Source of the DNA: Heptranchias perlo
Taxonomy: Eukaryota
Assembly: GCF_035084215.1 (NCBI RefSeq)
Contig: NC_090340.1
Coordinates: 14,818,001-14,882,000 of the forward strand
DNA: 64,000 nucleotides
Direction of reading: 5' to 3'
Shown piece by piece: positions 13,449-63,054 of this stretch. How positions within the stretch are numbered: the first letter of the stretch is position 1; every line of letters starts with the position of its first letter. Made by a program: the position numbers and the translations under genes. Under the pieces are notes generated by a model. That model had not been told where the DNA came from, made no database searches, and was given only the letters and a program-made list of their open reading frames with translations.

Positions 13449-13504
13449 CTATGCTTTCGTGGAATTATGAGCAGCAGAAATAGAGATTGTCAACCGTCCT
13501 TTAC
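13449..13504 (-). CDS. Gene A candidate terminal cytoplasmic exon 3 (GKGRLTISISAAHNSTKA*)
   Basis: ttttatttttaattgtcag| acceptor, phase-compatible, followed by non-repeat sequence that could be 3' UTR. Confidence 0.35.
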
Positions 13505-13594
13505 CTGACAATTAAAAATAAAATTCAGAACTGTGTTTTTAAATAATTTAACTACTTTTCATCCACATGCGATGCCCGTCTGTGCATGTCAGCA

Positions 13595-13860
13595 TCACTA
13601 TCATTAGACTCATACGCACACTCACCACCGTACCAATATCATTAAACTCAGAGATACATTCACCACTGCACAAATAACATTAAACTCACAGACACATTCA
13701 CCACAGCATCAATATCATTAGACTCACAGGCACACCACATCACCAATATTATTAGATTCATAGACACTCTCACCAAAGCATCTATTTTATTAGACTCACA
13801 GACACTTATCACTGTATCAAATCATTGGATTAAGAGCCACACTCCCACTGCATCAATAGC
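13595..13860. repeat. Degenerate minisatellite, ~31-32 bp unit, about 8 copies
   Basis: Recurrent cactcaccacagcaccaatatcattagactcacaga-like unit. Confidence 0.8.
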
Positions 13861-14079
13861 AAACTATTATTACATTCGAAGAATGTTCTTCAATTATATC
13901 CTCTCATTGTAATCGACAATAATTATAAAAGTATTCTTACACTAAATCAGTGTTGGACTAAGACAAACTTTCCCCAGTGCTAAATAAATATGCCAACATC
14001 TCAGGATGTCAAAAATAGTAGGATGCAAAACTTATATTTCGGTTCTCACGTTCATTCGTCGGTACTCCATTACTCATGA

Positions 14080-14138
14080 TTATTGTGTATGTGTTATTGT
14101 GTTCTTTATCTTTTTTATATTAAGAGGCAACCGATGAC
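14080..14138 (-). CDS. Gene A candidate terminal cytoplasmic exon 2 (GHRLPLNIKKIKNTITHTQ*)
   Basis: cttatgacttag| acceptor, phase-compatible with the TM exon. Weak pyrimidine tract. Confidence 0.25.
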
Positions 14139-14373
14139 CTAAGTCATAAGCGATATCGCACTGGTGGGTTTGCAATGCGCCCAGTGTGGAGTGACATTGA
14201 AACAAAGATACCGCTCTTAGATATACGAATATCTGAGTGAAACTCCTCAGTCTGCACTCTCTTCAAACCTAATGCCCCATTGCACATTTTCTCACTGAAT
14301 TAAGATACAACTTAAGGAACCCATACACATTAGAAGACGCCAGCTCAGATTGCTAGTCTCTGTTGTGTTATAT

Positions 14374-14615
14374 GGGGGGTAATTTTAACCCCCAAGAACG
14401 GGTTGGGTGTGGGTGGGAAGTTAAAAATAGTTGTTTTTTGGGCCGTGACCGCAAAATTTTCTGACTTTGTATTCCCATTGGGAAGCCTGTAATTGTATGT
14501 GCCCACATTAAACCCGGAAGTGGAGCCTGGTTGCGGTCACGACCCAAAAAATCGACTATTTTCAACACCCAAGCGCCCCCAACCCACCCGTTCTTGGGGG
14601 TTAAAATTACCCACC
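14374..14615. mobile_element. MITE with ~80 bp terminal inverted repeats
   Basis: gggggtaattttaacccccaagaacggg ... cccgttcttgggggttaaaattaccc. Inner arms ttttttgggccgtgaccgcaa / ttgcggtcacgacccaaaaaa are also inverted. Confidence 0.85.
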
Positions 14616-14917
14616 ATGGTCTTAGTTCCAGTCGCAGTTGAAACGCTAAAAGTGGCCTGGGCGTCCACGGAGAGGAAGAGGACAATTAGCATGAATTCCT
14701 GCTTCTGATCATTATCCAGAAGCCGCTGCGGGAAAATTCCAGTCTGATGAGGACGGACTAGGACTGGACCATGAGATGCCCGTCCACACTAATTCTCTGG
14801 ATTCACAGGTGAACGTTGGCCACGTGGGGGGAAAGGTATGGAGGGCTGTGAAGGCTGTGGACATCCCTTGAGAAGGTAACAAAAGAGGAGAACCTCGCAA
14901 AGCCACACTAAAGCAAT

Positions 14918-15060
14918 TCACTCTGATAGGTATGTATAACGGATTAAAGAACAGTTCGAGAAAACTGAACCCGCAGCTTTTACAGATGTTAATGCAATAT
15001 TAACAAAATCACTCGGGAAGTGGCGCCTGCGATAGGAATTCTTCAACCCTACATAGAAAC
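14918..15060 (-). CDS. Gene A candidate terminal cytoplasmic exon 1 (GFYVGLKNSYRRRHFPSD...LIRYTYLSE*)
   Basis: Acceptor cttctgtcttgtctcttcttag|, phase 1 frame open for 47 codons including the stop. The acceptor abuts a SINE end, so it could be fortuitous. Confidence 0.35.
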
Positions 15061-15074
15061 CTAAGAAGAGACAA

Positions 15075-15520
15075 GACAGAAGTTGCATTTGTATAGCACC
15101 TTTTACGACCACAGGACGTTCCAACGAGCTTCACAATCATTGAAGTACCTTTGAAGTGTAGCCATTAAGGTAATGTGGGGTAAAGCAGCAGCAAATTTGT
15201 GCATGGCAAAGTCCCACAAATAGCAATGACCAAATAATCGGTTTTACTTAAGTGGATGGAGGGATAAAAATTGGCCAGGACACCGGGGAAACTCCCCTGC
15301 TCCTCTTCGAAATAGAGTCATGGGATCTTTTATGTCCACCCGAGAGGGCAGACGGGCCTCGGTTTAAGGTCTTGTCAGAAAGTCGGTACCTCTGACAGAG
15401 CAGCACTCACTCAGTGCTGCGCTGAAATATTAGCCTAGATTTGTGCTCAAGTCTCTGGAGTGAGAACTTGAACGCACAACTTTTTGACACAGAACAAGGA
15501 GCTGCCACTGAGCCAAGCAT
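15075..15520 (-). mobile_element. DeuSINE (SacSINE1/AmnSINE1-related), near full length
   Basis: tRNA-like head (tggctcagtgg ... gttcaagt) and central ttaaaccgaggcccgtctgccctctc...aaagatcccatg...ccccggtgtcctggccaa, which I recognise as the Deu domain. Confidence 0.75.
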
Positions 15521-15773
15521 CAAAATTACATCCTATGTTCAGCGTTTACTATTGAATTAACCTGCAACAAACTGAATTAAATATGAAAATTATTGTGTTA
15601 TAGGTATCGGTTTTCCATGTTGTCTGCAATTTGGTACCAAAGCGTTTTAATCAGTAATTTTAAATTACATAAGAAACAGCTGACTAAAGCACATTTCTCA
15701 TCTCCATACCGCCAATCTTATCTGTGAATATGCTTTGAAGGTGATTTCATGAATTAATAAATCATTCTCTTAC

Positions 15774-15887
15774 CTTCAATGGAAGATATTTTTACGTGGT
15801 CCACAATAATAGCCGTCAGTGCAAGAATTACCAAAAAAGCCATGAGAAGCCGAACAATCATGAGGAGCGAGATGCTGAAACCGTGAC
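15774..15887 (-). CDS. Gene A exon 4: transmembrane exon with Arg (GHGFSISLLMIVRLLMAFLVILALTAIIVDHVKISSIE)
   Basis: ccgtag| acceptor and GAAG|gtaaga donor, 114 nt, phase 1-1, in frame with the C1 exon. About 24 hydrophobic residues with a single Arg. Not present in the ORF track. Confidence 0.85.
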
Positions 15888-16700
15888 CTACGGTGTAGGA
15901 TTAGAATCAAGATACAATACTGATATAAGTATTATCGATTGGTTCATACAGAGGAATGGGGTCGCAGCAATCGGCTAAAATCCCGATTCAATTATCCGCA
16001 ATGTGATTATTAAAGTAAGAGCGGCACTGAGTAGTAAAGGAAATCAACGGACGATGTTTTATTGATTATTGTCTGGCGAGGCTAAGAGTTGTTAATAAAA
16101 TGATACATTGAACCGGCTGCACTGTAGCCAGGTTTCGGGCACAGTTTAATGGAGGTTTCTGAGACAGGTCCTAATTGAACACGCAGTGGAGAGGTGTGGG
16201 TTACAAGTTGGACAGAGGGTTAATTTCACAATTTTGCACTAGAAGTAACAGAAAGGGGGATCAGGATCGAAACTGCATTGGGAGAAGCCCGAGATCAGCC
16301 AACTTGACTGCAGCTCCTGGTAACAGTTTTCATGCAGGGAAAGCCAGCAATGGTAAAGAATAAAACAATTTTGACGTGGAAACAAAAAAAGTGAAAAAAT
16401 ATTAATCGAAAGCAGGAGAGGAAATACAATCGGATACAAAAGATTAACTCCTGTTTATATTTTTTATACGGCAAATAGAAGAATTTGAAGACAAATAGCG
16501 TGCAATTGAGAATATTTGTGCGGCGGACGATATAACCCGGGTTCACAACACATCGGGTTCAATTATATTATATATTAAAACGAGAACGTTATGTTTTCGT
16601 TGATAATTCCCATTAACTATCTTCATGATTATAAATAGGAACAAACTCTACCATGTAGCTCATTGCGAATTTGACAGTAGCTAGACTGTTGGCCTCGTAC

Positions 16701-17006
16701 CTGGGTTAGATTTAGTATAGGTGATAACAGCTGGAGTCTCAAGTGAGACATGAGATACCGAGCAGGTATATTTGGCGCCGCTCGAGACAGGCTGCGTCTC
16801 TTCCAAAGTGCTGGAAACTTCATACAGCCCCTCAGTGTTCTGCCGTTTAATGGTGTGTATTCCTGTTGCAGTTTCAACGCCATTTTTATACCAAGTGAGG
16901 GTGAAGTTCTCCGGATAAAACTCAGCCGTTTCACACATAAGAATCAGAGACGCAGATGAATTCCCTTCAGCTGTCATAGAGACAATAATCAGTGGAGTTG
17001 GGGCAG
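16701..17006 (-). CDS. Gene A exon 3: Ig C1-set domain
   Basis: ttctgttccgcag| acceptor and CCAG|gtacga donor, phase 1-1. C1 hallmarks LMCETAEFYPENFTLTWYKN, GLYEVSSTL and YTCSVSHVSL. Confidence 0.93.
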
Positions 17007-17684
17007 CTGCGGAACAGAAAATGAGCAAAATCGAGTTACTGTGCACCATTGGGAGAAATTAAATATGATTCTGATTTACCTTCCGTCCATTTTATTTTAA
17101 CAGCAACATTCCAAAGCACAGCCTCCTGTCGCTTTCATTTTAGGCACATCATCTACACACACCTCATCCATTTCTCTCATCGCCGCCGGCAACTGTTCTA
17201 TTTTACCTGCGCTCTCGAGTCCAAGACATTGAGATATTCAACAGACACGTCGAACGATTGTTAATCAATGTCTGCGTCTCATAACCCAAATAATTAAATA
17301 AATAAATCTTGGGGGTAAGATGCCATACCAAGTCCCTCCATGTTTGGTACTCACAGATAGACAGTGACGATTAAGCTGCACATTGTCGATGATAAAACGA
17401 GGGTATTAGTAGGTATCGGACAGATCTCACAGCCGAGGCATGAAATTGGTGAAAGAAACTATATTCGTTTGAACCTCTGGCGGTTTCAGCAACACAGTTC
17501 CTGTGTATTATTGTATTTATTGGAGATTAGTGAGGTGACAACGTTGTGAATTCCAAGCTCCAGTTTGTTGAGTGAACCCGTTAATCAACAGTTAGTTGCA
17601 CGCTGGCTTTCAAATCCGTGACGCTAACGAATTATATGAGAATAAATTTCGGGAAGAGACAGCGGTGGGGGCAAACAGAGCTTC

Positions 17685-18115
17685 CAATTATATTCTCTGG
17701 AGATTAGAAGAATGAGAGGTGATCTCATTGAAAAATAGAAGATTCTAAGAGGGCTTGATCGGGTAGATGCTGAGAAGATGTTTCCCCTGGCTGGAGAGTC
17801 TAGAACTAGGGGACATAGTCTCAGGTTAAGGGATCGGACATTTAGGACTGAGATGAGGAGGAATTTCTTCACTCAGAGTGTACTGAATATTTGGAATTCT
17901 CTACCCCAGAGAGCTGTGGATGTTCAGTCGTTGAATATATTCAAGGCTGAGATAGATAGATTTTTAGACTCTGAGGGAATCAAGGGATATGGGGATAAGG
18001 CGGGAAAGTGGAGTTGAGGTCGAAGATCATCCATGAACTTATTGAATGGTGGAGCAGGCTCGAGGCACCATATGGCCTACCCTTGCTCCTATTTCGTATG
18101 TTCTTATGTTCCTTT
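17685..18115 (+). mobile_element. CR1 3' fragment in gene A intron 2 (antisense to the gene)
   Basis: RRMRGDLIE and RRNFFTQSVLNIWNSLP, tail tatgttcttatgttc. Confidence 0.88.
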
Positions 18116-18492
18116 GTTCAAACTGGACTAAGCGGCCTGTATATGGTGGTTAAGGCTCATTAATATAAATAATGTTCAGTCAGTTATATGCTTCCAATTT
18201 GTTCCTAACTTCCGCTATCAGACATCTGGTGTATAGATTGTATTTGGAGTTATAGTCTATCTGGTTACTATTGATCATTTTTGCAGCACTCTGCGTATGA
18301 AGGGTTACATTTTATGTCTAATTAGTATTTCTATACAGAGAACACGAACATACAACTTAACTTTCTCGCGAAATGTAATAATATAAAACATTATACTGTC
18401 AAAATTTGTACAATAAAACAATTTTAAAACATCCCCGTTTGTTGCGTTGGATATATTTGCGATAGTCCAGTTCTCCAGTGTTTCACACTCAC

Positions 18493-18813
18493 CATGCACA
18501 ATTAGATGTGATCCGGTTCCATTCCCTCGAACTATACCCTGACGCATCACTGCGCAGTGATAGATTCCAGAATCTTGGAAAGTCGCGCTCAGCAACTGAA
18601 AGAAACCGCTCGCTTTACTTTTCAGACCGAATCGTTTTCTGTCATCGGCACTTGTGCGCAGGTATTCATTCTCGCCCTGTTTCCACCAATGCACTCTTAC
18701 CCAGGAATGGTCTTGAGAGATGGGGAATATGCAGTAGAAGGTGATGTTTCCCCCTCTGGATACAGCCGCTTGTTCGGGCGCTTGAGTCACTCTGAATGAA
18801 GTGTGGTCCACAG
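18493..18813 (-). CDS. Gene A exon 2: germline-joined VJ-type Ig V domain
   Basis: ttctgtag| acceptor and CATG|gtgagt donor, phase 1-1, open frame. Motifs VTQAP, GGNITFYC, VHWWKQ, DSGIYHC and J-like GNGTGSHLIV in one exon. Confidence 0.93.
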
Positions 18814-18982
18814 CTACAGAAAACATAGTCAAGTACGGATTAATTTTATTAGATGGGACATGGAGATGGATGAGAGAAAGAAGAATCGATATAGAGGAAT
18901 TACCGTTCACTAAATTAATATGGAAACTATTTCGGAAGCATTTTATAAATTAAAGTAGCTGCTATATTGAATAAAGAGGTAC

Positions 18983-19037
18983 CTGTGCAAATAATCCACC
19001 GAAGAGTCAGGCAAAGAAATGACAAATTCGTCCACAT
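18983..19037 (-). CDS. Gene A exon 1: signal peptide (MWTNLSFLCLTLRWIICT)
   Basis: ATG at 19037, 55-nt exon ending ACAG|gtacct (phase 1). Hydrophobic leader, identical in size and phase to gene B exon 1. Confidence 0.8.
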
Positions 19038-21889: not shown

Positions 21890-24075
21890 AAGAACATAAG
21901 AAATTGGAGCAGGAGTAGGTCATACAGCCCCTCGAGCCTGCTCCGCCATTCAATAAGATCATGGCTGATGTCCGACCTCAACCCACTTTCCCGCCCGATC
22001 GTCATATCTCTTGAATCCCTTAGAGCCCAAAAATATATCGATCTCATTCTTGAATATATTTAACTAGTAAGCATCCACAGCCGTCTGGGGTAGAGAATTC
22101 CAAATATTCACAGCCCTCTGGGCAAAGAAATGACTTCGCATCCCAATCCTAAATCCCCGAGCCCTTACCCTGAGATTATGCCCCCTGGTTCTAGACTCTC
22201 CAGCAGAGGGAAACAGCCTCTCACCATCTACCCTGTCAAGCCCTCTCAGAATCTTATATTTTCAATGAGATCACCTCTCATTCTTCTAAACTCCAGAGAG
22301 TATAGGCCCATTCTTCTCAATCTCTCCTCAAAGGACAAACCTCTCATCCCAGGAATCAATCTAGTGATCGTTCGTTGCACCGCCTGTCAGACAAGTATAC
22401 CCTTCCCTAGTTAAGGAGACCAAGACTGTACACAGTACTCTAGGTGTGGTCTCATCAAAGTCCTGCACAATTGTCGCAACACTTCCTTACTCTTGCACTG
22501 CAAACCCTTGCAATAAAAACCAACGAACCCTTTGCCTTCCTAATTGATTGCTGCACCTGCATGTTAACTTTCTGTGTTTCGTGTACAAGGACACCAAAAT
22601 CTCTCTGCATATCAACATTTATTAGTTTCTCATCATTTAAAAAATATTCATTTTTCTATTCTTCCTACCAAAGTGAACAACTTCACATTTCCCCGCATTA
22701 TACTCCATCTGCCACCTTCTTGCCCTTCTCACTTAACCTGTCTACATCCCTTTGCAGACTCTTTGTGTCCTCCTCACAAATTACTCTCCCACCTAGTATT
22801 GTATCGTCAGCAAACTTAGATACAGTACACTCGGTCCCTTCATCTAAATTATTAATGCAGATTATAAATAGCTGAGGCCCAAGCACTGAGCCTTGTGGCA
22901 CTCCGCTAGATACAGCCTGCCAGCCTGAAAATGAACCGTTTATCCCTACTCTCTGTTGTCTGTCCATTAACCAAACCACTAACAGTGCTAATATATTACC
23001 CTCAATCCCATTAGCCCTTATGTTGTGTAACGACCTTTTGTTTGGCACCTTTTCGAATGCCTTTTGAAAATCCAAATATACTACATCCACTGGTTCCCCT
23101 TTATCTACCCTGCTAGTTACACCCTCAAAAATGTCTAATGGATTGGTCACACACGATTCCCTTTCATAAAACCATGTTGATTCTGGCTAATCATATTATG
23201 ATATTCTAAGTGCCCTGTTGCCACAGACTTAATAATAGATTCCATCATTTCTCCGACTACTGATGTCAGTCTAACTGGCCTGTAGTTCCCTGCTTTCTCT
23301 TTCCCTCCTTCCTTGAATAGCAGTGTTACATTTGCTACCTTCCAATGCATAGGGACCGTTCTAGAATCTAGGGAATTTTGGACGATCAAAACCACTATCT
23401 CTGCAGCCTCCTCTTTTAGAATCCTCTGATGTAGGCCATCAGATCCAGGGGATTGGTTGGCTTTTAGTCCCAATAATTTCTCCAGTACTTTTTCTTTACT
23501 AATTTTAATTACTTTGATTTCCTCATTCTCATTAGATCCTTGTTTCCCCGCGAACCCTAACCCTAACCCCGGTATTTTTTCCGTTTCTTTTACTGTGAAG
23601 ACAGATACAAAATATATGTTTAACGCCTCTGCCATTTCCTTTTTCCTGATTATAATTTCTTTTGTCTCAGCCTCTAAGGGACCCATGTTTACTTTCGCTA
23701 ATCTCTTCCTTTTTCCATATTTGTAGAAGCTCTTCCAATCTGTTTTTATATTTCTCGCTAGTTTACTCTTATATTCTATTTTCTCACTCGTTATCAATTT
23801 TTTGGTCTTCCTTTGCTGGTTTCTAAAACTCTCCCAATCCTCAGGCTTACTACTCTTCTTGACACCATTATAAGCCTCTTATTTTAATCTAATACTATCC
23901 CTAACTTCTTTAGTTGGCCACGGATGGATGACTTTTCCATCGAGTTTTTATTCCTCAATGGAATGTATATTTGTTGAGAATTATGCAATATTTCTTTAAA
24001 TGTTCTCCATTGCTTGTCTACCATCATAGCTTTTAATCTAATTTCCCAATCAACCTCCGCCAACTCACCCCTCAA
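21890..24075 (-). mobile_element. CR1 LINE ORF2 (RT), family B
   Basis: [18 protein letters not shown] and KFADDT, with the 3' tail at 21890. Confidence 0.92.
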
Positions 24076-25730
24076 AACTTCTCCAATCTCTCCACATAAC
24101 TTCAGTCCCTCATCTCTGGTATCATCCTGTTAATCCTCCTCTGTAACCTCCCATGTCCTCGACACCTTTCCTAAAGTGTGGTGCCCAAAATTGTATACAA
24201 TACTTCAGCTGAGGCCTAACCAGTGATTGTAAATGTTTGGCATGAATTCTACGTTTTTGTATTCAATGCCCCTATTTACAAAGTCAATATCCCATACGCT
24301 TTCTGAACCACCTTTTCAACTTGCTCTGCCACCTTCAAAGATTTGTGAATATACAACCCAGGTCTCTCTGCTCCTGCAACACCGTCAAAATGGTATCATT
24401 TAGGTTATACTGCTTCTCCATTTTGTTCCTCCCGCATTAAATTGCATCTGCCATGTGTCTGCCCATTTCACCAATCTGCCTATTCCTCCTGAAGTCTGCT
24501 ACTATCCTATTCACTACTTACTATGCTGCCAAGTTTTGTATCATTCGCATACTTCGAAATTGTACTCCCTCTACCCAAGCCCAGGTCATTTATATTTATA
24601 TTTAACAACAAAAACAATGATCCTCATTCCGATCCCTGGGGATCCAACTCCATACTTCTCTCCAGTCAGAAAAACATCCGTTCACCACTACTCTCTGCCT
24701 CTTCTGCCCAAGCCAATTACGTACCCAAATTACCACCGTCCCTTTAATCCCATCTGCTTCTATTTGCTACATGCGCCTGTTATGTGATGCTTTATCAAAT
24801 GCCTTTTGAAAGTCCATATATACAACATCCATTGCACTATCTTCATCAACCCTCTCTGATACTTCATCAAACAACTCAGTCAGGTTAGTCAAACACGACT
24901 TTTCTTTCACAAATCCATGCTGGCTGTCCCTTAATAAGCGATGCATCTCCAAGTGAGAATTAATGTTGCCGCTGACAATGGTCTCTCGAAGTTTTCCTAC
25001 TTCTGACCTTAGACTGATTGGCCTGTAGTTGCAAGATTTATCCCTCTCTCCTTTTTTGAATAGGGGTGTAACATTTGCAATTCCCCAGTCGTCTGGCACC
25101 ACTCCCATACCCAAGGAGGATTGAAGGATTGTGGTCAGACCTTCTGTCATCTCCACACTTGCTTCCTTCAGCAACCTAGGTTGCATCCCATCTGGACCAG
25201 ATGACCCGTTAACTTCGAGTGATGCCATCCTATTTAGCACCTCCTTTCTATCTATTTTCATCCTATCCAATATCTCTACTCCCACCTCCTCTACTTCATC
25301 CTCTTCTTTAGTGAAGGCAGATGCAAAGTACTCATTAAGGACCTCAGTCATGCCCCCTGCCTCCGCAAGAAGCTTTACTTCTTTGTCCCTAATCGGCCCC
25401 AACATTCCTTTCACTATTCTTTTTCTTTTTCTATGTTTATAAAAGATTTTTGGGTTCCCTTTTATGTTACAAGCTGATCTTTTCTCATACTTTCTCTTTG
25501 CCCTACTTATATCCCTTTTCGATTTCCCCCTGCACTCTTTGTATTCTGCCTGGTTTTCCACTGTATTTTGTACGTGGCGTTTGTCATAGACCTCATTTTT
25601 CTGTTTTATTTTAATCTCTATTCCCTTTTCATCCAGGGAGCTCTAGCTTTGGATGTCCTATCTTTCCACCTTATGGGAATATGCTTGGTCTGTACCTGAA
25701 GTATCTCTGCCTCATAAGCCTGCCATTGCT
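24076..25730 (-). mobile_element. CR1 LINE ORF2 fragment (another subfamily)
   Basis: 264-aa ORF with VPDDWGIANVTPLFKKG, QHGF and MDFQKAFD. Confidence 0.9.
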
Positions 25731-33059: not shown

Positions 33060-36000
33060 ATAGAAACATAGAAAATAGGAGCAAGATTAAGCCATTCGGC
33101 CCTTCGGGCCTACTCCGCCATTCAAAATGATCATGGCTGATCGTCTAACTCAGTAGCCTGTTCCCACTTTTTCCGCATATCCCTTGTTCCCTTTAGCATT
33201 GAGAAATATATCTGTCTCCTTCTTGAATACATCTAATGACTTGGCCTCCACCGCCTCCTGTGGTAGAGAATTCCACAGGTTCACCTCCCTCTGAGTGAAG
33301 AAATTTCTCCTCATATCGGTTCTAAATGGCCTAGCCCGTATCCTGAGATTGTGGCCCCTGGTTCTGGACTCCCCAACCATCGGGAACATCCTCCCTGCAT
33401 CTAGTGTGTATAGTCCTTTTAGAATTTTATGTGTTTTGATGAGATCACCTCTCATTCTTCTAAACTCTAGTGAATATAGGCCTAGTCGACCCAATCTCTC
33501 ATCATACGTCAGTCCTGCCATCCCAGGAATCAGTCTGGTAACCTTCGTTGCACTCCCTTCAAGGTAAGGACATCCTTCCTTTGATAAGGAGACCAAAACA
33601 ACACACAATACTCCAGATCTGGTCTCACCAAGGCCCTGTATAAATGCAGGAAGACATTTCTGTTCCTGTACTCAAATCCTCTTGCAATGAAGGCCAGCAT
33701 ACCATTCGCCTCCGTAACTGTTTGCTGCAACTGAATGCTCGCTTTCAGCGACTGGTGCACAAGGACACCCAGGTCTCGTTACACCTCCCCTTTTCCCAAT
33801 CTATCACCATTCAGATAATAATCTATCTTTCTGTTTTTACAACCAAAGTAGATAACCTCACATTTATCCACGTTATACTGCATCTGCCATGTCCTTGCCC
33901 GCTCACCCAACTTGTCTAAATCACATTGGAGCCTCTTTGCATCCTCCTCACAGCTCACATTCCACCCCGGTTTGTGTCGTCTGCAAACTTGAAAATGTTA
34001 CATTTAGTTCACTCATCCAAATCGTTGATATATATTTTGAATAACTGGGGCCCAAGCACTGATCCCTGCGGTACTCCACTAGCCTGCCACCGTTTATTCC
34101 TACTCTCTGTTTCCTGTCGTTCAAACAATTCTCAATCCATGCCAGTATATTCCCGCCAATCCCATGTGCTTTATTTTGCACACTAACCTCTTGTGCGGTA
34201 ACATATCAAAAGCCTTCTGAAAATCCAAATACACCACATCCCCTGGTTCTCCTCTATCTATTCCACTAGTTGCATCCTCAAGAAACTCCAGTAGATTTGT
34301 TAAGCATGATTTCCCTTTCATAAACCCAAGCTGACTTTGTCCAATCCCGTTAATGCCATCCAAGTGTGCTGTTATCACATCTTTTACAATAGACTCTAGC
34401 ATTTTCCCCACTATTGATGTTGGACTAACTTGTCTGAAATTCCCTGTTTTTTCTCTACCTCCTTTTTTAAATAGTGGGGTTACATTTGCCACCTTCCAAT
34501 CTGTAGGAACTGTTCCAGAGTCTCTATAATTTTGGAAGATGATCACCAATGCATCCACTATTTCCAGGGCCACTTCCATTAGTACTCTGGAATGTAGATT
34601 TTCAGGCCCTGGGGATTTGTCAGCCTTCAGCTCCATTAATTTCCCGAGCACCATTTCTTTTATTAATACTGGTTTCCTTCAGTCCCTCCCTCTCACTAGA
34701 CCCTTGGTTCCCTAACATTTCTGGGAGGTTATTTGTGTCTTCCTTTATGGAAACAGAACCAAAGTATGTGTTTAATTGTTATGTCATTTCTTTGTTCCTC
34801 ATTATAATTTCCCCCATTTTTGACAGTAAGGGACCTACATTTGTCTTCACTAATCTTTTTCTCTTGACGTATTTATAGAAGCTTTTACAGTCAGTTTTTA
34901 TGTTCCTTGCTAGTTTACTCTCACAGACTATTTCCCCCCTCTTAATCAATCTCTTTGTCGTCCTTTGTTGAATTCTGAACTGTTCCCTACCCTCAGGATG
35001 CCGCTTTTTCTATCAATTTTATATGTCCCCTCTTTAGATCTAATACTATCCCTAATTTCTTTTGTAAGCCACAGTTTAGACACCTTTCCTGTTTTATTTT
35101 TGCGCCAGACAGGAATGAATGATTGTTGTAATTCCTGCACACGTTCTTTAAATATTAGCCATTGCCTATCCACCGTCATCCCTTTTAGTAAAATTCCCCA
35201 ATTTATCATAGCCAACTCGCACTTTCGTAATTTCCTTTATTTAGATTCAGGACCCTAGTTTCGGATTCGACTACTTCACTCTCCATCTTAATGAGGAATT
35301 CCATCATGTTATGGTCGCTCTTCCCTAAGGGACCCCGCAAAACAAGATTGTTAATTAATCTTTTCTCATTGCACAATACCCAGTCTAGGATCGCCTGTTC
35401 TCTAGTTGTTTCCTCAATGTATTGGTCTTGAAATCCATCACTCCAGAAATTGCTTTCCCACAGTATTATTGCTAATTTAGTTTGACCAATCTATAAGTAG
35501 ATTAAAGTCACCTATGGTTATCCTTGTACCCTTCTTGCATGCGTCTCTAATTTCCTGTTTAATGCCCTCCCCTACATCTCCACTACTGCTTGGGGGCCTA
35601 TAGACAACCCCCACCAACGTTTTCTGCCACTTGGTGTTTCTTAGATCAACCCATACAGATTCCACGTCGTGATTTTCCGTGCCAATATCATTCCTCACTA
35701 TTGCATTGATTTCCTCCTTTACTAACAGCGATACCCCACCTCCTTTCCCTTTTTGCCTGTCCTTCCTAAATATTGAATACCCCTAGATGCTCAGTTCCCA
35801 TCCTTGGTGAACCTACAGCCATGTCACCCTAATCACATCTGTTTCATTACCGTTAATATCTATCTGCGCTGTTAATTAATCCACCTTGTTGCGAATGCAC
35901 CACACATTAAGGCACAATACATTTGGACTTGTCTTTTTAAGATTGCTAGTCATCTTAGTTTTATTTTGCACTCTGGTCCTATTTGTTTTTCGCCCTTGTT

Positions 36001-41700: not shown

Positions 41701-42020
41701 CTCTCTCCTTCTTTAAGTTGCTCCTTTAAACCTACCTCTTTGACCAATCTTTTGGTCATCTGTCCTAATGTGGCTTGGGATAAAAATGTTGATTGATAAC
41801 GCACCTGGGAAGCGCATGGGATGTTTTACTACGTTAAAGGCAATTTATAAATGGAAGTTGTTGTTTCTTGTTTTTGTTATTGTTGTTGTAGTTAGCCACG
41901 GTTGGATCATTTTCCCCGTGGAGCTTTTATTCCTCAAGGGAATATATATTCGTTGAGGATTATGAATTATTTCTTCAAATGTTCACCATTGCTTATCTAC
42001 CATCATATCTTTAATCTAAT
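38717..42020 (-). mobile_element. CR1 LINE family B copy interrupted by an L2 insertion
   Basis: RT motifs at 39382-40641. The sequence resumes at ~41889 (tagttagccacgg), collinear with the 21890-24075 copy. Confidence 0.9.
40712..41888 (+). mobile_element. L2-clade LINE RT/3' fragment with (GTT)n-like tail
   Basis: LGDTIQKHNIRFHIYTDDTQFY, LQQNIGKTE and ISRLDYS motifs, tail gttgttgtt. Confidence 0.85.
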
Positions 42021-42099
42021 TACCACCAGTGTTTTCTGCCCCTTTTTATTTCTTAGTTCCAGCCATACTGAGTTCCCAAACGTCATCACCCTGCAACCA

Positions 42100-43858
42100 G
42101 GGGCCCGATGTTAGCAGGGCTGCGGTTCTCGGCGGGGGGGGGGGGGGGCTATGAAATTAGTCAGTTTCCCGCGAGATCGTAGCAGACAATTCACTAATTG
42201 GATCCACTGACCTGCTCCTCCGGATTCCCCACTGCTGATCTGCGCGTCGGGCGGGCTGCGCATGCGCAGTAAGATCTGTCAGCTGGAGGCGCTCTAGTTA
42301 AAGGGGCAGTCCTCCACTGATGCTGCAACAAACAGAAAAAATTACAGCATGGAGCAGCCCAGGGGGAAGGCTGCTCCCACTTTAATGATGCCTCACTCCA
42401 GTTATCAATACATGGGGTGAGGAGGAGGGGGGAGGACAGAGATCTTCCTCCCGGCGGGCGGGAGGAAGTGGCCTGCCTTTGCCACCAGGAAGGCCCGGCT
42501 CTAGGTGGCAGAGGAGGTCACCAGCACCACCAACATATCGCCCATCTGCATAAAGTGCAGGAGGCACTCCAATGACCTCAGTAGGTCAGCCAAAGTGAGT
42601 ACACGTTGTCTTTCCCCTACACTCCGTCTGCCACATCACTGCCCCCACCCCACATCTCCTTCGGCACTGCCAACACTACTCTGTCACATCACCCCTCATA
42701 CCCACTCAAACCTCATCCTCATCTTACCTGCACCTACTCACCTCGCCAGTATTCACCCCGCCACTACCACTCAACCCAATCCTCATACAATCTCATGGCT
42801 CTATCTCATACTCACCCTCTCGTGCATCTCTTTCACGGCCAGCCTCACTCAACCTGCCACTACCTGTGCTGCAGCCACAGGGCATGCATCACATATGTGC
42901 AGTAGGCAGCGTAAGGCAAATGTGTCGTGAGCATGAAGGGGATGCACAAGGGTGTTTGAGGGTTTGTCATGGGTGTTGCTTATATTGAATTTCTGAACAA
43001 CTCACATTACATATTATATTGGCACCACTACTGCCACGTCTTCGCGAATCCTGTCTGGTTTGTGCAATAATGCTCGCTCCTGAGGATCACTATGAGGAGC
43101 CACAACTGATGCCACCCATTGTGTCACTGCAGAGTGGGTGTAGGTGTATTTGCAGGGCTCTTCTGTGCAGACGACTGGGAGACATCGGCGATGTCCCCGG
43201 TGGCACCCTGGAAGGATGCGGAGCAGAAGTTGATGAGGGCAGTGGTGACTTTGACAGCGACAGGTAAGAAGGTGGTGCTCAGGCCAGCCAGGAGCAGCTC
43301 GGCATGAAAGCGGCTGCAGATGTCCACGGCTACATGTCGAGTGACTCTGAGCCTCCGTGTGCACTGCTGCTCAGAGAAGTCCAGGAGGCTGAGCCTCGGT
43401 CTGTGGACCCCGTGGCGAGGGTAGTGCCCTCTGCGACGCATCTCTCTCTGCCGTAGCCCTCCCTCCTGCTGTGCAGGTGAATGTGTCACAGCACTCTGTT
43501 GTGGAGCTCCACGTGTCAGAGGTGGACGGCGTGGATGGCGAGGCTGGTGAGGCTGGTGATGCTGTTTGCCCTCCGAGGAGGTCATGACTGCAGCTACGGC
43601 GGCCCCACTCCGCAAGATGTACATCTGAGGGGGTCCGCAAGGTAGGTACATGTCTCTGGACCCCGGGTTAAGTGTGCAAGTTGGTGACTTTGACCGTCAG
43701 GAGGAGGGTGGTGGAGGCCAAACTTTGTCCCAAGTGACAGAGTGGCCTCCTGCAATGGGTGAGGGTCTTCCCCCCCACCACCTGTCAAATGGACCTTTGC
43801 AGCTGCCACTGGCTGACAGCTGCAACACGTCCATTTGAACTGGGAGTGTTTCCCAATC
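42100..43858. mobile_element. PIF/Harbinger DNA transposon derivative: Myb/SANT ORF (+) and transposase N-terminus (-)
   Basis: Minus strand SEQQCTRRLRVTR..LPVAVKVTTAL..ASFQGATGD..VSQSSA (HARBI1-type N-terminus). Plus strand from 42349 MEQPRGKAAP..VAEEVTS..KCRRHSNDLSRSAK (Myb/SANT-like). GC-rich. Confidence 0.85.
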
Positions 43859-43859
43859 T

Positions 43860-44300
43860 GCATCGGAATGTCCTTCCCACCACCCCATTGTTTGTCATCT
43901 GCAAATTTTAATGTTGCTCCCTCAACTCCCCAATCAAGATAATTAATCTTTATAATAAATAAAAGCAGCCCACCAGAGACCCCGGGGAACCTCTCTCGGC
44001 ATATCTTTCCACTCCGAGAAACGTTCTTTCACCCTTATATGTTGTTTTCTGTCCTCCAATCATCTCTCTATCCCCGTGGCTACTTTGTCCTCACTTTCAC
44101 GTGCCTTTGTCGTATGTGGTATCTTTTCAAATACGTTTTGAAAATCCATTCAAACTGCATCTGCGGCATTCTCTTTCTCTGTTTTCTTTGTTAGTTCTTC
44201 AATTCATTCTTAAATCAAGCGGGATCTGCTATTTCTAAATTCGTGATTGCTGGACATGATTAGTTCAGGTTTCTACAAGTATTTCTCAATGTTATGGCGA
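43860..44300 (-). mobile_element. Old CR1 RT fragment
   Basis: gtcatctgcaaattt (KFADD) and ttttgaaaatccat (MDFQ) on the minus strand. Confidence 0.6.
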
Positions 44301-60544: not shown

Positions 60545-60635
60545 GTACGTTCGTTCCTTCGTTCATTCTTTGTCTCTCTCTCTGAAACTCTCTCCGTGAT
60601 TTTATAACTATAACTAATGTTCATTTTGTTAACAG

Positions 60636-60953
60636 TTGCCGCCGATACTCTGTTTAAAGTGACCCAGGCCCCTGAAAACACCAATTCGATCGCTGGTACA
60701 AACATTGCCTTCAATTGCACATTTCCCAGTGCTCCAGACGATTCAAATGTGAATATATATTGGTGGAAACTTGGCGAAAAGGAATTGATACAACCAGGCT
60801 CAGACAGCAGGCAACGATTTAGTAATGAGAATGGAAGAGCCTCCTTCCATCTCCTGAATGTCAGTGTCCTGGACTCTGGAGCCTATTACTGCTTCGTGAC
60901 ACTTCTGGGGGACAGGGCTGAAAATGGAAGTGGATCAAAGCTTGTCGTCAGTG
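60636..60953 (+). CDS. Gene B exon 2: germline-joined VJ-type Ig V domain
   Basis: ttttgttaacag| acceptor and AGTG|gtaagc donor. Motifs VTQAP, GTNIAFNC, IYWWK, DSGAYYC and ENGSGSKLVV. About 43% identical to gene A V by hand alignment. Confidence 0.93.
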
Positions 60954-61424
60954 GTAAGCACATTGCAAAGAACGGATCGACTGCATAGTCTCACTGTAAT
61001 TCAAAATAAATAAAAAAGCATGGCATTCTCTCTCTCGCTCTCGTGTTGCTTTAACATTTACATTAGAAGTCAAATATTTAAATGATGGAGATTCTAGTTA
61101 TGAAATACAACACGTGTAGCACTGTGTACTGGTTTTCAATCTATATTAATCGATTTATTATTCATTATTAATGTTGTTTCATCCATGTAAATTTGCGCAG
61201 GAAGCGTGTTCATGCCATACCGGTGTGAATACAGATTGTGAAAAATCTTGAAAGATTTTCAGGATGAATAACATTTCGATTGGAATTATTTGAATATAAC
61301 CTGAACAATTTAAAAATTGCCTTTTGGTGATCTTATAAGGAGAAATTTCATCGTAAACGTGCTATTATCGAGTATAAAGTCTAATTTCAATGATAAAATT
61401 AATACAGAAGTTACTCCACATGAT

Positions 61425-61745
61425 AAAGAACTTGCACTTATTTAGCGCCTTTCAAGACGTCCGAAAAAGCGCTTTACAACCAATGAAGTATTTTTGAAAT
61501 GTAGTCACTATTGTAATGTTGGAAAATATGGCAGCAAATTTGCACACAGCAAAGTTCCACAAACAGCAATGAGATAATGACCAGGCAATTAATGATGGTA
61601 CTTGAGGGATAAATATTGGCCAGTACAACAAGACAACTTCTCTGCACGTCTTCGATTAGTGCTGTGGGATCCTTTATGTCCACCACAGAGAGCAGAGGGA
61701 GTTACATTTTAACATCTCATCAGATGGCACTCCCCGCAGTTCTTA
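61425..61745 (-). mobile_element. DeuSINE copy in gene B intron 2
   Basis: Homologous to 15075-15420. Confidence 0.7.
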
Positions 61746-62464
61746 TTTTCCAGTTATAAATGTCTCTCACACGCCGAAGTAACCCGTGAAATGAAGATTT
61801 CGCCTTCAATTAATAGCCCCGATTGTGATTTAATAAATTTATTGTAAACCGTACGAGCAACACGAATCAGAGAACTCAAGGCTGGAAATTGAATTCCTTT
61901 CGTGGTTGGGGATAATTGGGAGGAAGGATGTCTGTCGAAAGCGTTTTATCCCCGCTGTTTATTTCTCGGGTTACACTCAGTAACGGGACGGGGGTGGGGG
62001 CGGGGGGGGGTGGCAGTGTGGGGAGGGGGGCGCCCGGGCGGGTGTGGGCTTGCGATTCCTCTTCTCACTGTCAGTAGCAACACTGTGCGAGCGCATTCTG
62101 AACGTTTTGTTGGGTAGGGAATAGTGGGCATAGAAAGTCTTCACAAACGCATTTACTATTCGCTACAGAGACCAGAGCAATGCTTCCCCATGCTTTCCAA
62201 TTCTTGCAAATAGCGGGAAAAAAATGGAAAGTCAGGTTTCGAGATTTGATAAAGGGAACAATGTAAATCGTGAGCACAATCTATCTTAATTAAAATGTTA
62301 TGTGTTCGCTTCAACATAAAGAAACAGATATTTAGCTCTCTGATACTGTTATACCCGATCTGAACTCATATTTCTCCATTTGGAAGGCTCCGTCACAAAA
62401 GGGAATAAAGTTCTAAATTGCAGAATATAGCAAGTATTAACTTTCTTCTTTGCTCTTTCACCAG

Positions 62465-62776
62465 CTCCCCCAACTCCGCTGAGGATTGTCTCCAAAGCAT
62501 CTGAAAGCAACGTATCTGGTTCTTTCACTCTCGTTTGTGAAATGGCTGCATTTTACCCGGAGGGACTGACTACCACTTGGTATAAAAATGATAGAAGCAT
62601 TGAGATTGGAATACGTACAACTAAACAGCTCACTAGAGCCGGGATGTATGAAGCTTCCAGCTATCTTGAAGAGACACAGCCTGTTCAGGGAGGGACTGTT
62701 TATGTCTGTCTGGTTTCTCACGTGACCCTCCAGATTCCAGCCATGGCGATTTACGTGGTTCCCAATTCTAATTCAG
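62465..62776 (+). CDS. Gene B exon 3: Ig C1-set domain (no TM exon found; likely beyond the window)
   Basis: Long pyrimidine tract + ccag| acceptor and TCAG|gtaaga donor. Motifs LVCEMAAFYPEGLTTTWYKN and YVCLVSHVTL. About 53% identical to gene A C1 by hand alignment. Confidence 0.93.
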
Positions 62777-63054
62777 GTAAGATGTCACTTTTCTTACAAA
62801 AACAAACATCTGTCAGTAATCTGTGATTGCTTTATTGCCCGATATGGGGAAATTTGCCCTATACATCATTGAAAGGGAAACATGTTGGAAATTTCGTTAC
62901 AAATAGCGTTTAGTGGAATTTATCCCCAGCGTTATTTTTTTTGTAAAATTTCATTAATATTAAGAATATTGCAATTGATTGTTCATTTCAAGAGCATTTA
63001 GATTTCCGGTTCCTGACCTACCAACTTCCGCCGAATGGTTACAACCTTTACATT

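What the first reader, a model, noticed from the sequence alone, without database searches (positions are those of the whole stretch)
15774..15887. Activating-type transmembrane segment resembling FcRgamma/CD3zeta-coupled receptors
Seen: TM SLLMIVRLLMAFLVILALTAIIVDH with one Arg near the outer face and an acidic residue at the inner end. Known: NKp46, FcalphaRI, OSCAR and LILRA have the pattern NLxRxxxAxLVLxxLxxxxx(E/D), and NKp30 also has a TM Arg; these pair with FcRgamma/CD3zeta. Activating SIRPbeta instead uses a central Lys with DAP12. Inference: gene A joins a TCR-like VJ-C1 ectodomain to an NK-receptor-style signalling anchor.
Basis: partly seen in the sequence, partly recalled or inferred. 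Interest (0 to 1): 0.8.

Follow-up and report, generated by a model that had tools for sequence, protein, structure and literature searches.

The report
Shark activating-receptor arginine membrane anchor
A sevengill-shark immune-receptor gene has a real membrane-anchor exon with a buried arginine and, most likely, a short tail with no signalling motif. That makes it the probable activating twin of a near-identical inhibitory receptor: a familiar design in a shark gene family for which I found no paper.

Summary
Window 15887-15774 (minus strand) is a 114-nt, phase 1-1 exon with good splice sites. It encodes (G)HGFSISLLMIVRLLMAFLVILALTAIIVDHVKISSIE. It is the only exon-like hydrophobic segment in the 64 kb.

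It belongs to an intact Heptranchias perlo gene with leader, one-exon VJ and C1 exons. RefSeq model XP_067853651.1 joins C1 to this exon. Two neighbouring paralogues, XP_067853654.1 and XP_067853655.1, have very different ectodomains (V about 39%, C1 about 56% identical). They carry the same TM at 84-87% identity, with Arg and Asp-His invariant, followed by a short tail with no Tyr motif, GKGRL...

A homologue of that tail exon lies at 13504-13449. The likely tail is therefore 27 residues without tyrosine, not RefSeq's 47-residue exon.

The nearest relative, XP_067853772.1, has V 105/106 and C1 93/101 identical, an unrelated uncharged TM and three ITIMs. This is a classic activating/inhibitory pair.

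The claimed NKp46/LILRA kinship is not met: the defining Asn of NxxR and the DYT motif are absent. The adaptor is untested, and the RNA contigs came from paralogues. This scan had already noted the family elsewhere in this genome.

The parts
18983..19037 (-). Leader exon of gene A (ATG 19037-19035; MWTNLSFLCLTLRWIICT, phase 1 donor)
   Evidence: Sequence read. Joint 18813->18983 (CT..AC, i.e. GT..AG on the minus strand) in RNA contigs of the near-identical paralogue. 17/18 identical to the leader of P0013.
18493..18813 (-). VJ exon (321 nt, phase 1-1). V-set domain ending in the J-like GNGTGSHLIVH; V and J lie in one exon.
   Evidence: Pfam V-set 3.8e-7. Joints 18813->18983 and 17006->18493 give the exact borders. 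105/106 identical to P0013.
16701..17006 (-). C1-set exon (306 nt, phase 1-1)
   Evidence: Pfam C1-set 9.3e-14. Joint 17006->18493. 101/101 identical to RefSeq XP_067853651.1 (P0012) and 93/101 to P0013. PDB best hits are Ig CH domains, UrIg2 and SIRPalpha.
15774..15887 (-). The finding: TM exon (114 nt, phase 1-1) encoding (G)HGFSISLLMIVRLLMAFLVILALTAIIVDHVKISSIE. Arg codon at 15852-15850, Asp codon at 15801-15799.
   Evidence: only such exon in the window. Identical to residues 121-158 of RefSeq XP_067853651.1. 84-87% identical to the TMs of P0014 and P0015. Low-depth RNA contigs cover 15770-15817.
13449..13504 (-). Probable last coding exon, inferred by homology: ttgtcag|GT AAA GGA CGG ... 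gives (G)KGRLTISISAAHNSTKA, stop TAG at 13451-13449.
   Evidence: tblastn of the P0014 tail gave E 6e-6. Sequence read. The same exon follows the TM exon in the RefSeq models P0014 and P0015. Its first four bases, GTAA, explain why the RNA contigs match 4 nt past the TM exon end.
14918..15060 (-). Alternative tail exon used by RefSeq model XP_067853651.1 (GFYVGLKNSYRRRHFPSDFVNIALTSVKAAGSVFSNCSLIRYTYLSE, stop at 14920-14918). Probably not the conserved 3' end.
   Evidence: P0012 sequence. ORF, acceptor read. No Pfam hit, no RNA depth, no counterpart in P0014/P0015. Contains the ITIM-consensus IRYTYL.

Best explanation
Gene A is a Heptranchias perlo gene (RefSeq protein XP_067853651.1) on the minus strand, running from about 19037 to 13449. 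All five exons inspected have open frames and canonical splice sites. I read it as the activating member of a paired activating/inhibitory receptor family of non-rearranging VJ-C1 receptors found in sharks and rays.

The exon at 15887-15774 is its transmembrane exon, spliced directly to C1. It encodes a helix with a single conserved Arg about one third of the way in from the outer face and an Asp-His at the inner end. It is most likely followed by the small exon at 13504-13449, giving a 27-residue cytoplasmic tail without tyrosine.

This TM-plus-tail unit is a conserved cassette. It is shared with two neighbouring genes whose ectodomains have diverged far more.

Inferred mechanism:
- The buried Arg pairs with the two transmembrane Asp residues of a disulfide-linked ITAM adaptor dimer. 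By the position rule this would be a zeta/FcRgamma-type 'RDD' assembly.
- On that basis, ligand binding by a V domain that is 99% identical to that of the ITIM-bearing twin XP_067853772.1 would give an activating signal instead of an inhibitory one.

Shown: exon, frame, splice sites, conservation, the twin, and the absence of Tyr motifs in the conserved tail.
Inferred: use of the 13504 exon in this gene, adaptor coupling, adaptor identity, and expression of this copy.
For: - Exon anatomy and uniqueness in the window.
- The V-set and C1-set exons have borders confirmed by spliced contigs.
- A phmmer search of 1.84 billion representatives with the 38-residue exon returned one hit. It was RefSeq XP_067853651.1, 100% identical, with the TM directly after C1.
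- P0014 (XP_067853654.1) and P0015 (XP_067853655.1) carry the same TM: 32/38 and 33/38 identical, with R, A(+4), FLVILALT and DHVK invariant. Their V is only about 39% and their C1 about 56% identical to gene A.
- Both paralogues continue into GKGRL(A/T)IS.SAAHNS..., with no ITIM, ITSM or ITAM.
- The homologous exon sits in the window at 13504-13449 with a good acceptor.
- The X1 contigs on 15770-15817 stop matching after GTAA, which is the start of that exon. They show neither read-through nor a joint to RefSeq's 15060 exon.
- The twin P0013 has leader 17/18, V 105/106 and C1 93/101 identical, an unrelated TM (shuffle p 0.16), and three ITIM-consensus motifs plus one ITSM-like motif.
- The inhibitory-type TM and tail exons are absent from the window.
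- Position rule: Arg near the top of the TMD couples to zeta-zeta or gamma-gamma, whereas a central Lys couples to DAP12 (PMC13107469).
Against: - No RNA contig with gene A's own C1 sequence was found. All C1 contigs carry the 11 differences of the inhibitory paralogue and continue into its TM, reading ASVIDVSLYF.
- The contigs touching the TM exon have 1-2 mismatches, are low depth (10-12) and do not cover the Arg codon. They may come from P0014/P0015-type genes.
- RefSeq's own model of this gene starts at a Met inside V and uses a different 47-residue tail that holds YVGL and the ITIM-consensus IRYTYL.
- No AATAAA or ATTAAA lies within 1 kb after the 13449 stop.
- No relative of the TM was found outside H. 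perlo.
- FcRgamma was reported as not found in sharks with 2014 data (PMC4016189).
- No adaptor could be looked for here.
Confidence: 0.65

Rival explanations
1. The RefSeq model is right at the 3' end. The TM exon is spliced to 15060-14918, giving a 56-residue tail with YVGL and a C-terminal ITIM-consensus IRYTYL. The receptor would then combine a TM Arg with an inhibitory-type motif, a KIR2DL4-like or dual-function design, rather than being a pure activating form.
For: The XP_067853651.1 sequence. Strong acceptor tctcttcttag|GT and an open 47-codon frame. IRYTYL fits (S/I/V/L)xYxx(I/V/L). The region is not a repeat within the window.
Against: - The exon has no counterpart in the two paralogues that share the TM. 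Both use the GKGRL exon, and that exon is conserved in gene A.
- It has zero RNA depth, and no 15774->15060 joint appears in any run.
- A 47-codon open frame after a random in-phase acceptor has roughly a 10% chance.
- The same model is also odd at its 5' end: it starts at a Met inside V although a leader exon exists.
- No Pfam hit.
Confidence: 0.15
2. Gene A is a silent or decaying duplicate. The exon is real in ancestry but this copy is not used; only the paralogues P0014/P0015 and the inhibitory twin are expressed.
For: In the one sample available, all V-C1 contigs are of the P0013 type, at depths of 13-670. At the ten C1 differences listed (of 11), no contig carries gene A's letter (table 3). 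The RefSeq model is 5'-truncated.
Against: - All five exons are open with canonical splice sites and an intact ATG.
- The TM and tail show only conservative changes relative to the paralogues.
- Logan contigs drop rare variants, and only one sample was available. Activating members of paired families are often expressed at low levels or in restricted cell types (general knowledge).
Confidence: 0.12
3. The TM is a true evolutionary member of the NxxR-type, FcRgamma-coupling TM subtype of LRC/FCRL receptors (NKp46, LILRA, OSCAR, GPVI, FcalphaR).
For: It shares an Arg in the upper TM, an Ala at +4 and an unusual acidic residue at the cytoplasmic end, 17 residues after the Arg. C-terminal acidic residues are named as a hallmark of that subtype in PMC6557307.
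Against: - The invariant Asn at -3 is absent: the motif is MIVR or MFVR in all three genes.
- There is no DYT motif.
- No sequence search connects them. The Atlas hit to an 'Fc alpha receptor' cluster is a single-helix structural match without weight.
- LRC genes and FcRgamma were reported as not found in sharks (PMC4016189).
- The exon shares its length, its phase and the E|GK.GR junction with the family's own inhibitory TM exon, which suggests a local origin.
Confidence: 0.07
4. The Arg does not recruit an ITAM adaptor. It serves another purpose, such as ER retention or quality control, association with a different partner such as a DAP10-like chain, or pairing with another receptor chain.
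For: The Arg is residue 10 of 26 apolar residues, which is not at the very top. NKG2D uses a mid-membrane Arg with DAP10 (PMC13107469). Adaptor identity is untested.
Against: The combination of a conserved lone basic residue, a motif-less short tail and an ITIM-bearing twin is the standard signature of adaptor-coupled activating receptors (PMC13107469, PMC6557307). There is no membrane-proximal Cys for covalent pairing.
Confidence: 0.1

Closest known systems
NxxR-type TM of FcRgamma-coupled LRC/FCRL receptors (LILRA2, PIR-A, NCR1/NKp46, GPVI, OSCAR, FcalphaR; Xenopus XFL 'TM1')
   Same: A lone Arg in the upper part of the TM. An unusual acidic residue at the cytoplasmic end. A short tail. The TM is used as a conserved cassette on diverse ectodomains, and it is the most conserved element of the genes that carry it (PMC6557307, PMC2413239).
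   Different: The Asn at -3 is missing (MIVR, not NxxR). There is no DYT motif. No detectable sequence relationship exists. The ectodomain is VJ + C1, not C2-type domains. FcRgamma and LRC genes were reported as not found in sharks.
SIRPalpha / SIRPbeta paired receptors
   Same: A V domain with a J-like strand plus C1-set domain(s). An inhibitory ITIM form and an activating short-tailed form with near-identical V domains. RefSeq names several relatives 'tyrosine-protein phosphatase non-receptor type substrate 1-like'. The C1 exon hits SIRPalpha (2wng) at 7.7e-12.
   Different: One C1 domain rather than two. A TM Arg high in the helix rather than SIRPbeta's central Lys, which couples to DAP12. 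The C1 exon scores higher against Ig CH domains and UrIg2 than against SIRPalpha.
Macaque activating KIR3DS (Arg TM cassette taken from KIR2DL4, couples to FcRgamma and not DAP12; PMC8102735)
   Same: The activating form is made by putting a foreign Arg-bearing TM/tail cassette behind the ectodomain of an inhibitory receptor. The cassette is shared among genes.
   Different: An unrelated family and unrelated sequences. Recombination is inferred here only from the jump in identity between C1 (92%) and the TM (none). I had no DNA of the partner loci to map a breakpoint.
TCR alpha/delta chains
   Same: VJ + C1 + TM with an Arg that, in the TCR, binds zeta-zeta (PMC13107469). The V exon weakly hits TCR and Ig V domains.
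   Different: V and J are in one germline exon, with no rearrangement. No Lys lies five residues below the Arg. There is no connecting-peptide Cys. The family has ITIM-bearing members.
UrIg / UrIg2, shark non-rearranging VJ-C1 genes (PMC12227049; PDB 9dmx)
   Same: Elasmobranch, single-exon VJ, C1-type constant domain. UrIg2 is the second-best PDB hit of the C1 exon (1.3e-15).
   Different: UrIg is described as a non-rearranging shark antibody (title of ref. 29 in PMC12227049), and UrIg2 has nine C1 domains. That paper describes no paired activating/inhibitory forms. The V exon does not hit UrIg2 among its 60 best PDB matches.

Membership tests
NxxR-type FcRgamma-coupling TM subtype (LRC/FCRL TM1) | Arg in the N-terminal part of the TM | tested here: met
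   R is residue 10 of the 26-residue apolar run and is followed by 16 apolar residues. It is invariant in three paralogues.
NxxR-type FcRgamma-coupling TM subtype (LRC/FCRL TM1) | Asn three residues before the Arg (NxxR), described as invariant (PMC6557307, PMC2413239) | tested here: not met
   M-I-V-R in gene A and P0015, M-F-V-R in P0014. Definition taken.
NxxR-type FcRgamma-coupling TM subtype (LRC/FCRL TM1) | [quoted passage not shown] | tested here: not met
   The upstream sequence is KSNP|GHGFSIS (GHSFSIS, GHSLSIS in the paralogues). Definition.
NxxR-type FcRgamma-coupling TM subtype (LRC/FCRL TM1) | [quoted passage not shown] | tested here: met
   IIVDHVK: Asp at R+17, invariant in three paralogues.
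NxxR-type FcRgamma-coupling TM subtype (LRC/FCRL TM1) | Physical association with FcRgamma | not testable with these tools
   This needs co-expression. I could not query the shark proteome for adaptors without a tool-given query sequence.
Paired activating/inhibitory IgSF receptors | A partner gene with a near-identical ectodomain and ITIM(s) | tested here: met
   P0013 (XP_067853772.1): V 105/106 and C1 93/101 identical. Motifs LHYTAL, IVYAQI, LTYATL and TEYAQL.
Paired activating/inhibitory IgSF receptors | Basic residue in the TM of the activating form, none in the inhibitory form | tested here: met
   Gene A has Arg. The P0013 TM, FWAPACAVGGLAFLVLMVFIG, has no charge.
Paired activating/inhibitory IgSF receptors | Short cytoplasmic tail without signalling motifs | tested here: inconclusive
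   Met if the conserved exon 13504-13449 is used (27 residues, no Tyr) or with read-through (SSIEGKRMIY*). Not met under the RefSeq tail exon (IRYTYL). No gene-specific cDNA was available.
Paired activating/inhibitory IgSF receptors | Partners lie in one gene cluster | tested here: inconclusive
   All lie on the same 66.5-Mb H. perlo sequence.
SIRP family | V + two C1 domains; activating member with a central TM Lys (DAP12) | tested here: not met
   There is one C1 exon between V and the TM. The basic residue is Arg, not Lys.
T-cell receptor chains | Separate V and J segments that rearrange; a conserved TM basic pair (alpha/delta: Arg and Lys); an interchain Cys | tested here: not met
   V and J are in one exon, 18813-18493. 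No Lys follows the Arg within the TM, and there is no Cys between C1 and the TM.
UrIg/UrIg2 | VJ followed by several C1-type domains | tested here: not met
   A single C1 exon is followed directly by the TM exon. UrIg2 has nine C1 domains (PMC12227049).

The most novel reading that the evidence does not exclude
The Arg-TM plus short-tail unit is a mobile signalling cassette. It has been moved between, or kept constant across, strongly diverged VJ-C1 genes. It would be the cartilaginous-fish counterpart, possibly a relative, of the tetrapod NxxR/FcRgamma-coupling TM. That would place zeta/gamma-type coupling of germline-encoded, antigen-receptor-shaped (VJ-C1) innate receptors at the base of jawed vertebrates, in a lineage where FcRgamma and LRC genes were reported missing. 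It would also hint that the TCR-alpha-Arg/zeta-zeta assembly mode was shared with non-rearranging VJ-C1 receptors.
Probability: 0.12. Interest if true: 0.7.

Novelty: new variant of a known kind. Interest (0 to 1): 0.45.

Why it matters
Paired activating/inhibitory receptors with a charged TM are well known in mammals, birds, frogs and bony fish. The shark and ray VJ-C1 family exists only as automatic annotations under misleading names: 'H-2 class II beta-like', 'Ig lambda light chain-like', 'SIRP-like', 'tapasin-related'.

This locus gives a clean pair, with 99% identical V domains and opposite signalling ends. It also gives a conserved Arg-TM cassette with testable partners. It therefore offers a direct way to ask which ITAM adaptor innate receptors use in cartilaginous fish, and whether that assembly resembles TCR-alpha/zeta-zeta.

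It also corrects a RefSeq model: a probably wrong 3' exon, a truncated 5' end and a wrong name.

Tried and rejected
1. RNA support. The only runs offered (X1-X4, one sample, contigs) gave exact V and C1 splice joints. However, they belong to the inhibitory paralogue: 11/306 differences in C1, and the downstream letters read ASVIDVSLYF, matching P0013.
I could not fetch DNA of the P0013, P0014 or P0015 loci. No dN/dS estimate, conversion breakpoint or map positions were possible.
3. A phmmer search of the 38-residue exon against 1.84 billion representatives found only the gene's own RefSeq model. The paralogues were hidden inside 50% clusters and appeared only in the word-index searches. Absence outside H. 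perlo is therefore not established.
4. The PDB sequence search with the TM gave nothing at E<=10.
5. The ESM Atlas search on the TM/tail part gave only low scores and single-helix matches, including an 'Fc alpha receptor' cluster. I rejected these as uninformative.
6. Homology of the TM to the family's ordinary TM was not above shuffles (p 0.14-0.54). Against the Arg-bearing TMs of Mustelus and Hypanus the Arg aligns in register, with p 0.045 and 0.02. This is not significant after 12 tests.
7. No inhibitory-type TM or tail exons lie in the window, which rules out alternative splicing of one gene into both forms here.
8. Literature searches for this family, or for shark adaptors, found no paper. 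UrIg/UrIg2 is a different architecture.
9. Direct comparison with NKp46, LILRA or OSCAR sequences was not done. I had them only from memory, which is not admissible. I used the published motif definition instead.

Full report
**Observation**

Window 15887..15774 is a 114-nt exon. It is bounded by ccgtag|GT and GAAG|gtaaga and is phase 1 at both ends. It reads (G)HGFSISLLMIVRLLMAFLVILALTAIIVDHVKISSIE.

The Arg codon is at 15852-15850. It is the only charge in a 26-residue apolar run. Sixteen apolar residues separate it from Asp-His at the inner end.

I scanned both strands of the window for open phase-1 AG...GTRAG exons of 90-150 nt with a strongly hydrophobic 20-residue window. This exon was the only one found, so it is not a chance hydrophobic frame.

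**The gene**

Upstream on the same strand lie three further exons:
- a leader exon, 19037-18983;
- a single-exon VJ domain, 18813-18493 (Pfam V-set, ending GNGTGSHLIVH);
- a C1-set exon, 17006-16701 (Pfam C1-set, 9e-14).

All are phase 1. Spliced contigs from four runs of one sample show joints 18813->18983 and 17006->18493 with GT..AG ends. These confirm the borders.

The 38-residue exon was searched against 1.84 billion representative proteins and gave one hit, 100% identical. It is RefSeq XP_067853651.1 of Heptranchias perlo, named 'H-2 class II histocompatibility antigen, A-S beta chain-like'. This identifies the genome. It also shows that NCBI's pipeline joins C1 directly to this exon. 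That model starts at a Met inside the V exon. It ends in a 47-residue exon at 15060-14918.

**The family and the twin**

A V-domain search found relatives in:
- H. perlo;
- Heterodontus, Scyliorhinus and Mustelus;
- Mobula and Hypanus.

They carry assorted automatic names: SIRP-like, tapasin-related, CD276.

The nearest relative is XP_067853772.1 (P0013, 370 aa). Compared with gene A:
- leader 17/18, V 105/106 and C1 93/101 identical;
- then no similarity at all.

P0013 has an uncharged TM, FWAPACAVGGLAFLVLMVFIG. Its long tail carries LHYTAL, IVYAQI and LTYATL (ITIM consensus) and TEYAQL.

The abundant RNA contigs over V and C1 carry P0013's 11 C1 differences. They run on into letters that translate to ASVIDVSLYF, which is P0013's TM exon. 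That 30-mer is absent from the window. No inhibitory-type TM or tail exon is in the window either. So these are two separate genes, not two splice forms of one gene.

**The TM is a conserved cassette**

Word-index searches restricted to the TM and tail of the RefSeq proteins found two more H. perlo genes with nearly consecutive accessions: XP_067853654.1 (P0014) and XP_067853655.1 (P0015).
- Their V and C1 domains are only about 39% and 56% identical to gene A.
- Their TM exons are 32/38 and 33/38 identical.
- Arg, Ala at +4, FLVILALT and DHVK are invariant, and the changes are conservative.

Both continue with GKGRL(A/T)IS.SAAHNS... and stop after 20 residues. Neither has an ITIM, ITSM or ITAM.

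A tblastn with that tail finds its homologue in the window at 13504-13449. It follows the acceptor ttgtcag and encodes (G)KGRLTISISAAHNSTKA, then a stop. The conserved architecture is therefore C1 | Arg-TM | short tail with no Tyr motif (Tyr-free in gene A), and gene A has all of it.

Two low-depth contigs of run X1 lie on 15770-15817. They stop matching four bases past the exon end. Those four bases, GTAA, are also the first four of the 13504 exon. The contigs show neither read-through nor a joint to RefSeq's 15060 exon. My laid stretch began at 13500, so the junction itself could not be displayed. These contigs have 1-2 mismatches and may come from the paralogues.

I rate RefSeq's 15060 exon as the less likely 3' end. 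It has no RNA depth and no counterpart in the paralogues, but it contains the ITIM-consensus IRYTYL. I cannot exclude it.

**Mechanism**

Four features occur together: a lone conserved basic residue in the TM, a short tail without motifs, a twin with the same V domain and ITIMs, and reuse of the TM on other ectodomains. This is the standard signature of an adaptor-coupled activating receptor.

A 2026 review gives the position rule (PMC13107469):
- An Arg near the top of the helix assembles with the Asp pair of zeta-zeta or FcRgamma dimers, as in TCR-alpha, CD89, NKp30 and NKp46.
- A central Lys goes with DAP12.
- NKG2D's central Arg goes with DAP10.

Here the Arg sits about 16 residues above the inner boundary. 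This favours a zeta/gamma-type partner but does not prove it.

A 2014 survey found no FcRgamma in shark data (PMC4016189). I could not search for adaptors here.

**Comparison with the NKp46/LILRA type**

The literature defines that TM subtype by four features (PMC6557307, PMC2413239):
- an Arg inside an NxxR motif with an invariant Asn;
- a DYT motif upstream;
- acidic residues at the C-terminal end;
- FcRgamma association.

The shark cassette has the Arg and the acidic end. It reads MIVR or MFVR and has no DYT. No search linked it to LRC or NCR proteins. So it works like that type but is not a demonstrable member.

Several features point to a local origin:
- The exon has nearly the same length as the family's ordinary TM exon (38 against about 39 codons) and ends at the same E|GK.GR junction.
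- Short-tailed members in Scyliorhinus, Mustelus and Hypanus carry an Arg at one fixed column of the ordinary TM.
- That Arg aligns in register with gene A's Arg, at weak significance (p 0.02-0.045, uncorrected).

**Limits**
- Expression and splicing of this particular copy are not shown.
- Absence of the cassette outside H. perlo is not established.

**Earlier notes of this scan**

The scan already holds first-reader notes and follow-ups on the same family elsewhere in this genome. Examples are s1-882557, s1-882560 and s1-883221. Those with follow-ups (s1-882557, s1-882560) reached a similar paired-receptor reading. I treated them as leads only. The species, the twin and the cassette were established here independently.

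**Verdict**

The 'activating-type anchor' reading is supported by anatomy and conservation. The specific LRC/NCR kinship and the adaptor assignment are not supported. The finding is a new variant of a well-known design, in a family for which I found no describing paper. Interest is moderate.

Noticed in passing
window 60614-62823 (+ strand): A second VJ-C1 gene ('gene B') lies head-to-head with gene A, 41 kb away. Its VJ exon is in ORF 60614-60985 and its C1 exon in ORF 62431-62823 (Pfam V-set / C1-set). Its V and C1 are only about 42-43% and 55-58% identical to two H. perlo relatives of gene A (P0001, P0003). Its TM exon is not in the window, so its signalling type is unknown.
   Followed up: partly
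window 18701 / 17006 (minus strand) and P0011: Transcripts of the inhibitory paralogue use a cryptic donor inside the V exon (TGG|gtaaga). This appears as joint 17006->18701. RefSeq isoform X3 (P0011) lacks 35 V-domain residues (57-91 of P0013). The same cryptic sites are present in gene A's V exon.
   Followed up: partly
P0004 (Scyliorhinus), P0008 (Mustelus), P0009/P0010 (Hypanus): Short-tailed family members in other sharks and a ray carry an Arg at one fixed column of the family's ordinary TM (W-x-x-R-C...GGL). This looks like a second, KIR-like route to activating forms. It may be distantly related to the H. perlo cassette (in-register alignment, p 0.02-0.045).
   Followed up: partly
window 15078-15355 and 61427-61699: A SINE-like repeat lies just downstream of the TM exon, with a 71%-identical copy in gene B's V-C1 intron. 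It has very high depth in the RNA contigs (thousands), as does another repeat at 17637-18227 in the V-C1 intron of gene A.
   Followed up: partly
window 22701-23186, 24770-25642, 34124-34678 (minus strand): Fragments of LINE-type reverse transcriptase (Pfam RVT_1) fill much of the space between the two receptor genes.
   Followed up: partly
window 42000-44000: A GC-rich block (55% against about 41% elsewhere) has long open frames on both strands and no Pfam match. Its nature was not determined.
   Followed up: partly
RefSeq XP_067853651.1 / window 13449-19037: The RefSeq model of gene A appears mis-built and misnamed. It starts at a Met inside the V exon although an intact leader and full V exon exist. 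It probably uses a wrong last exon. It is also called an MHC class II beta chain.
   Followed up: yes
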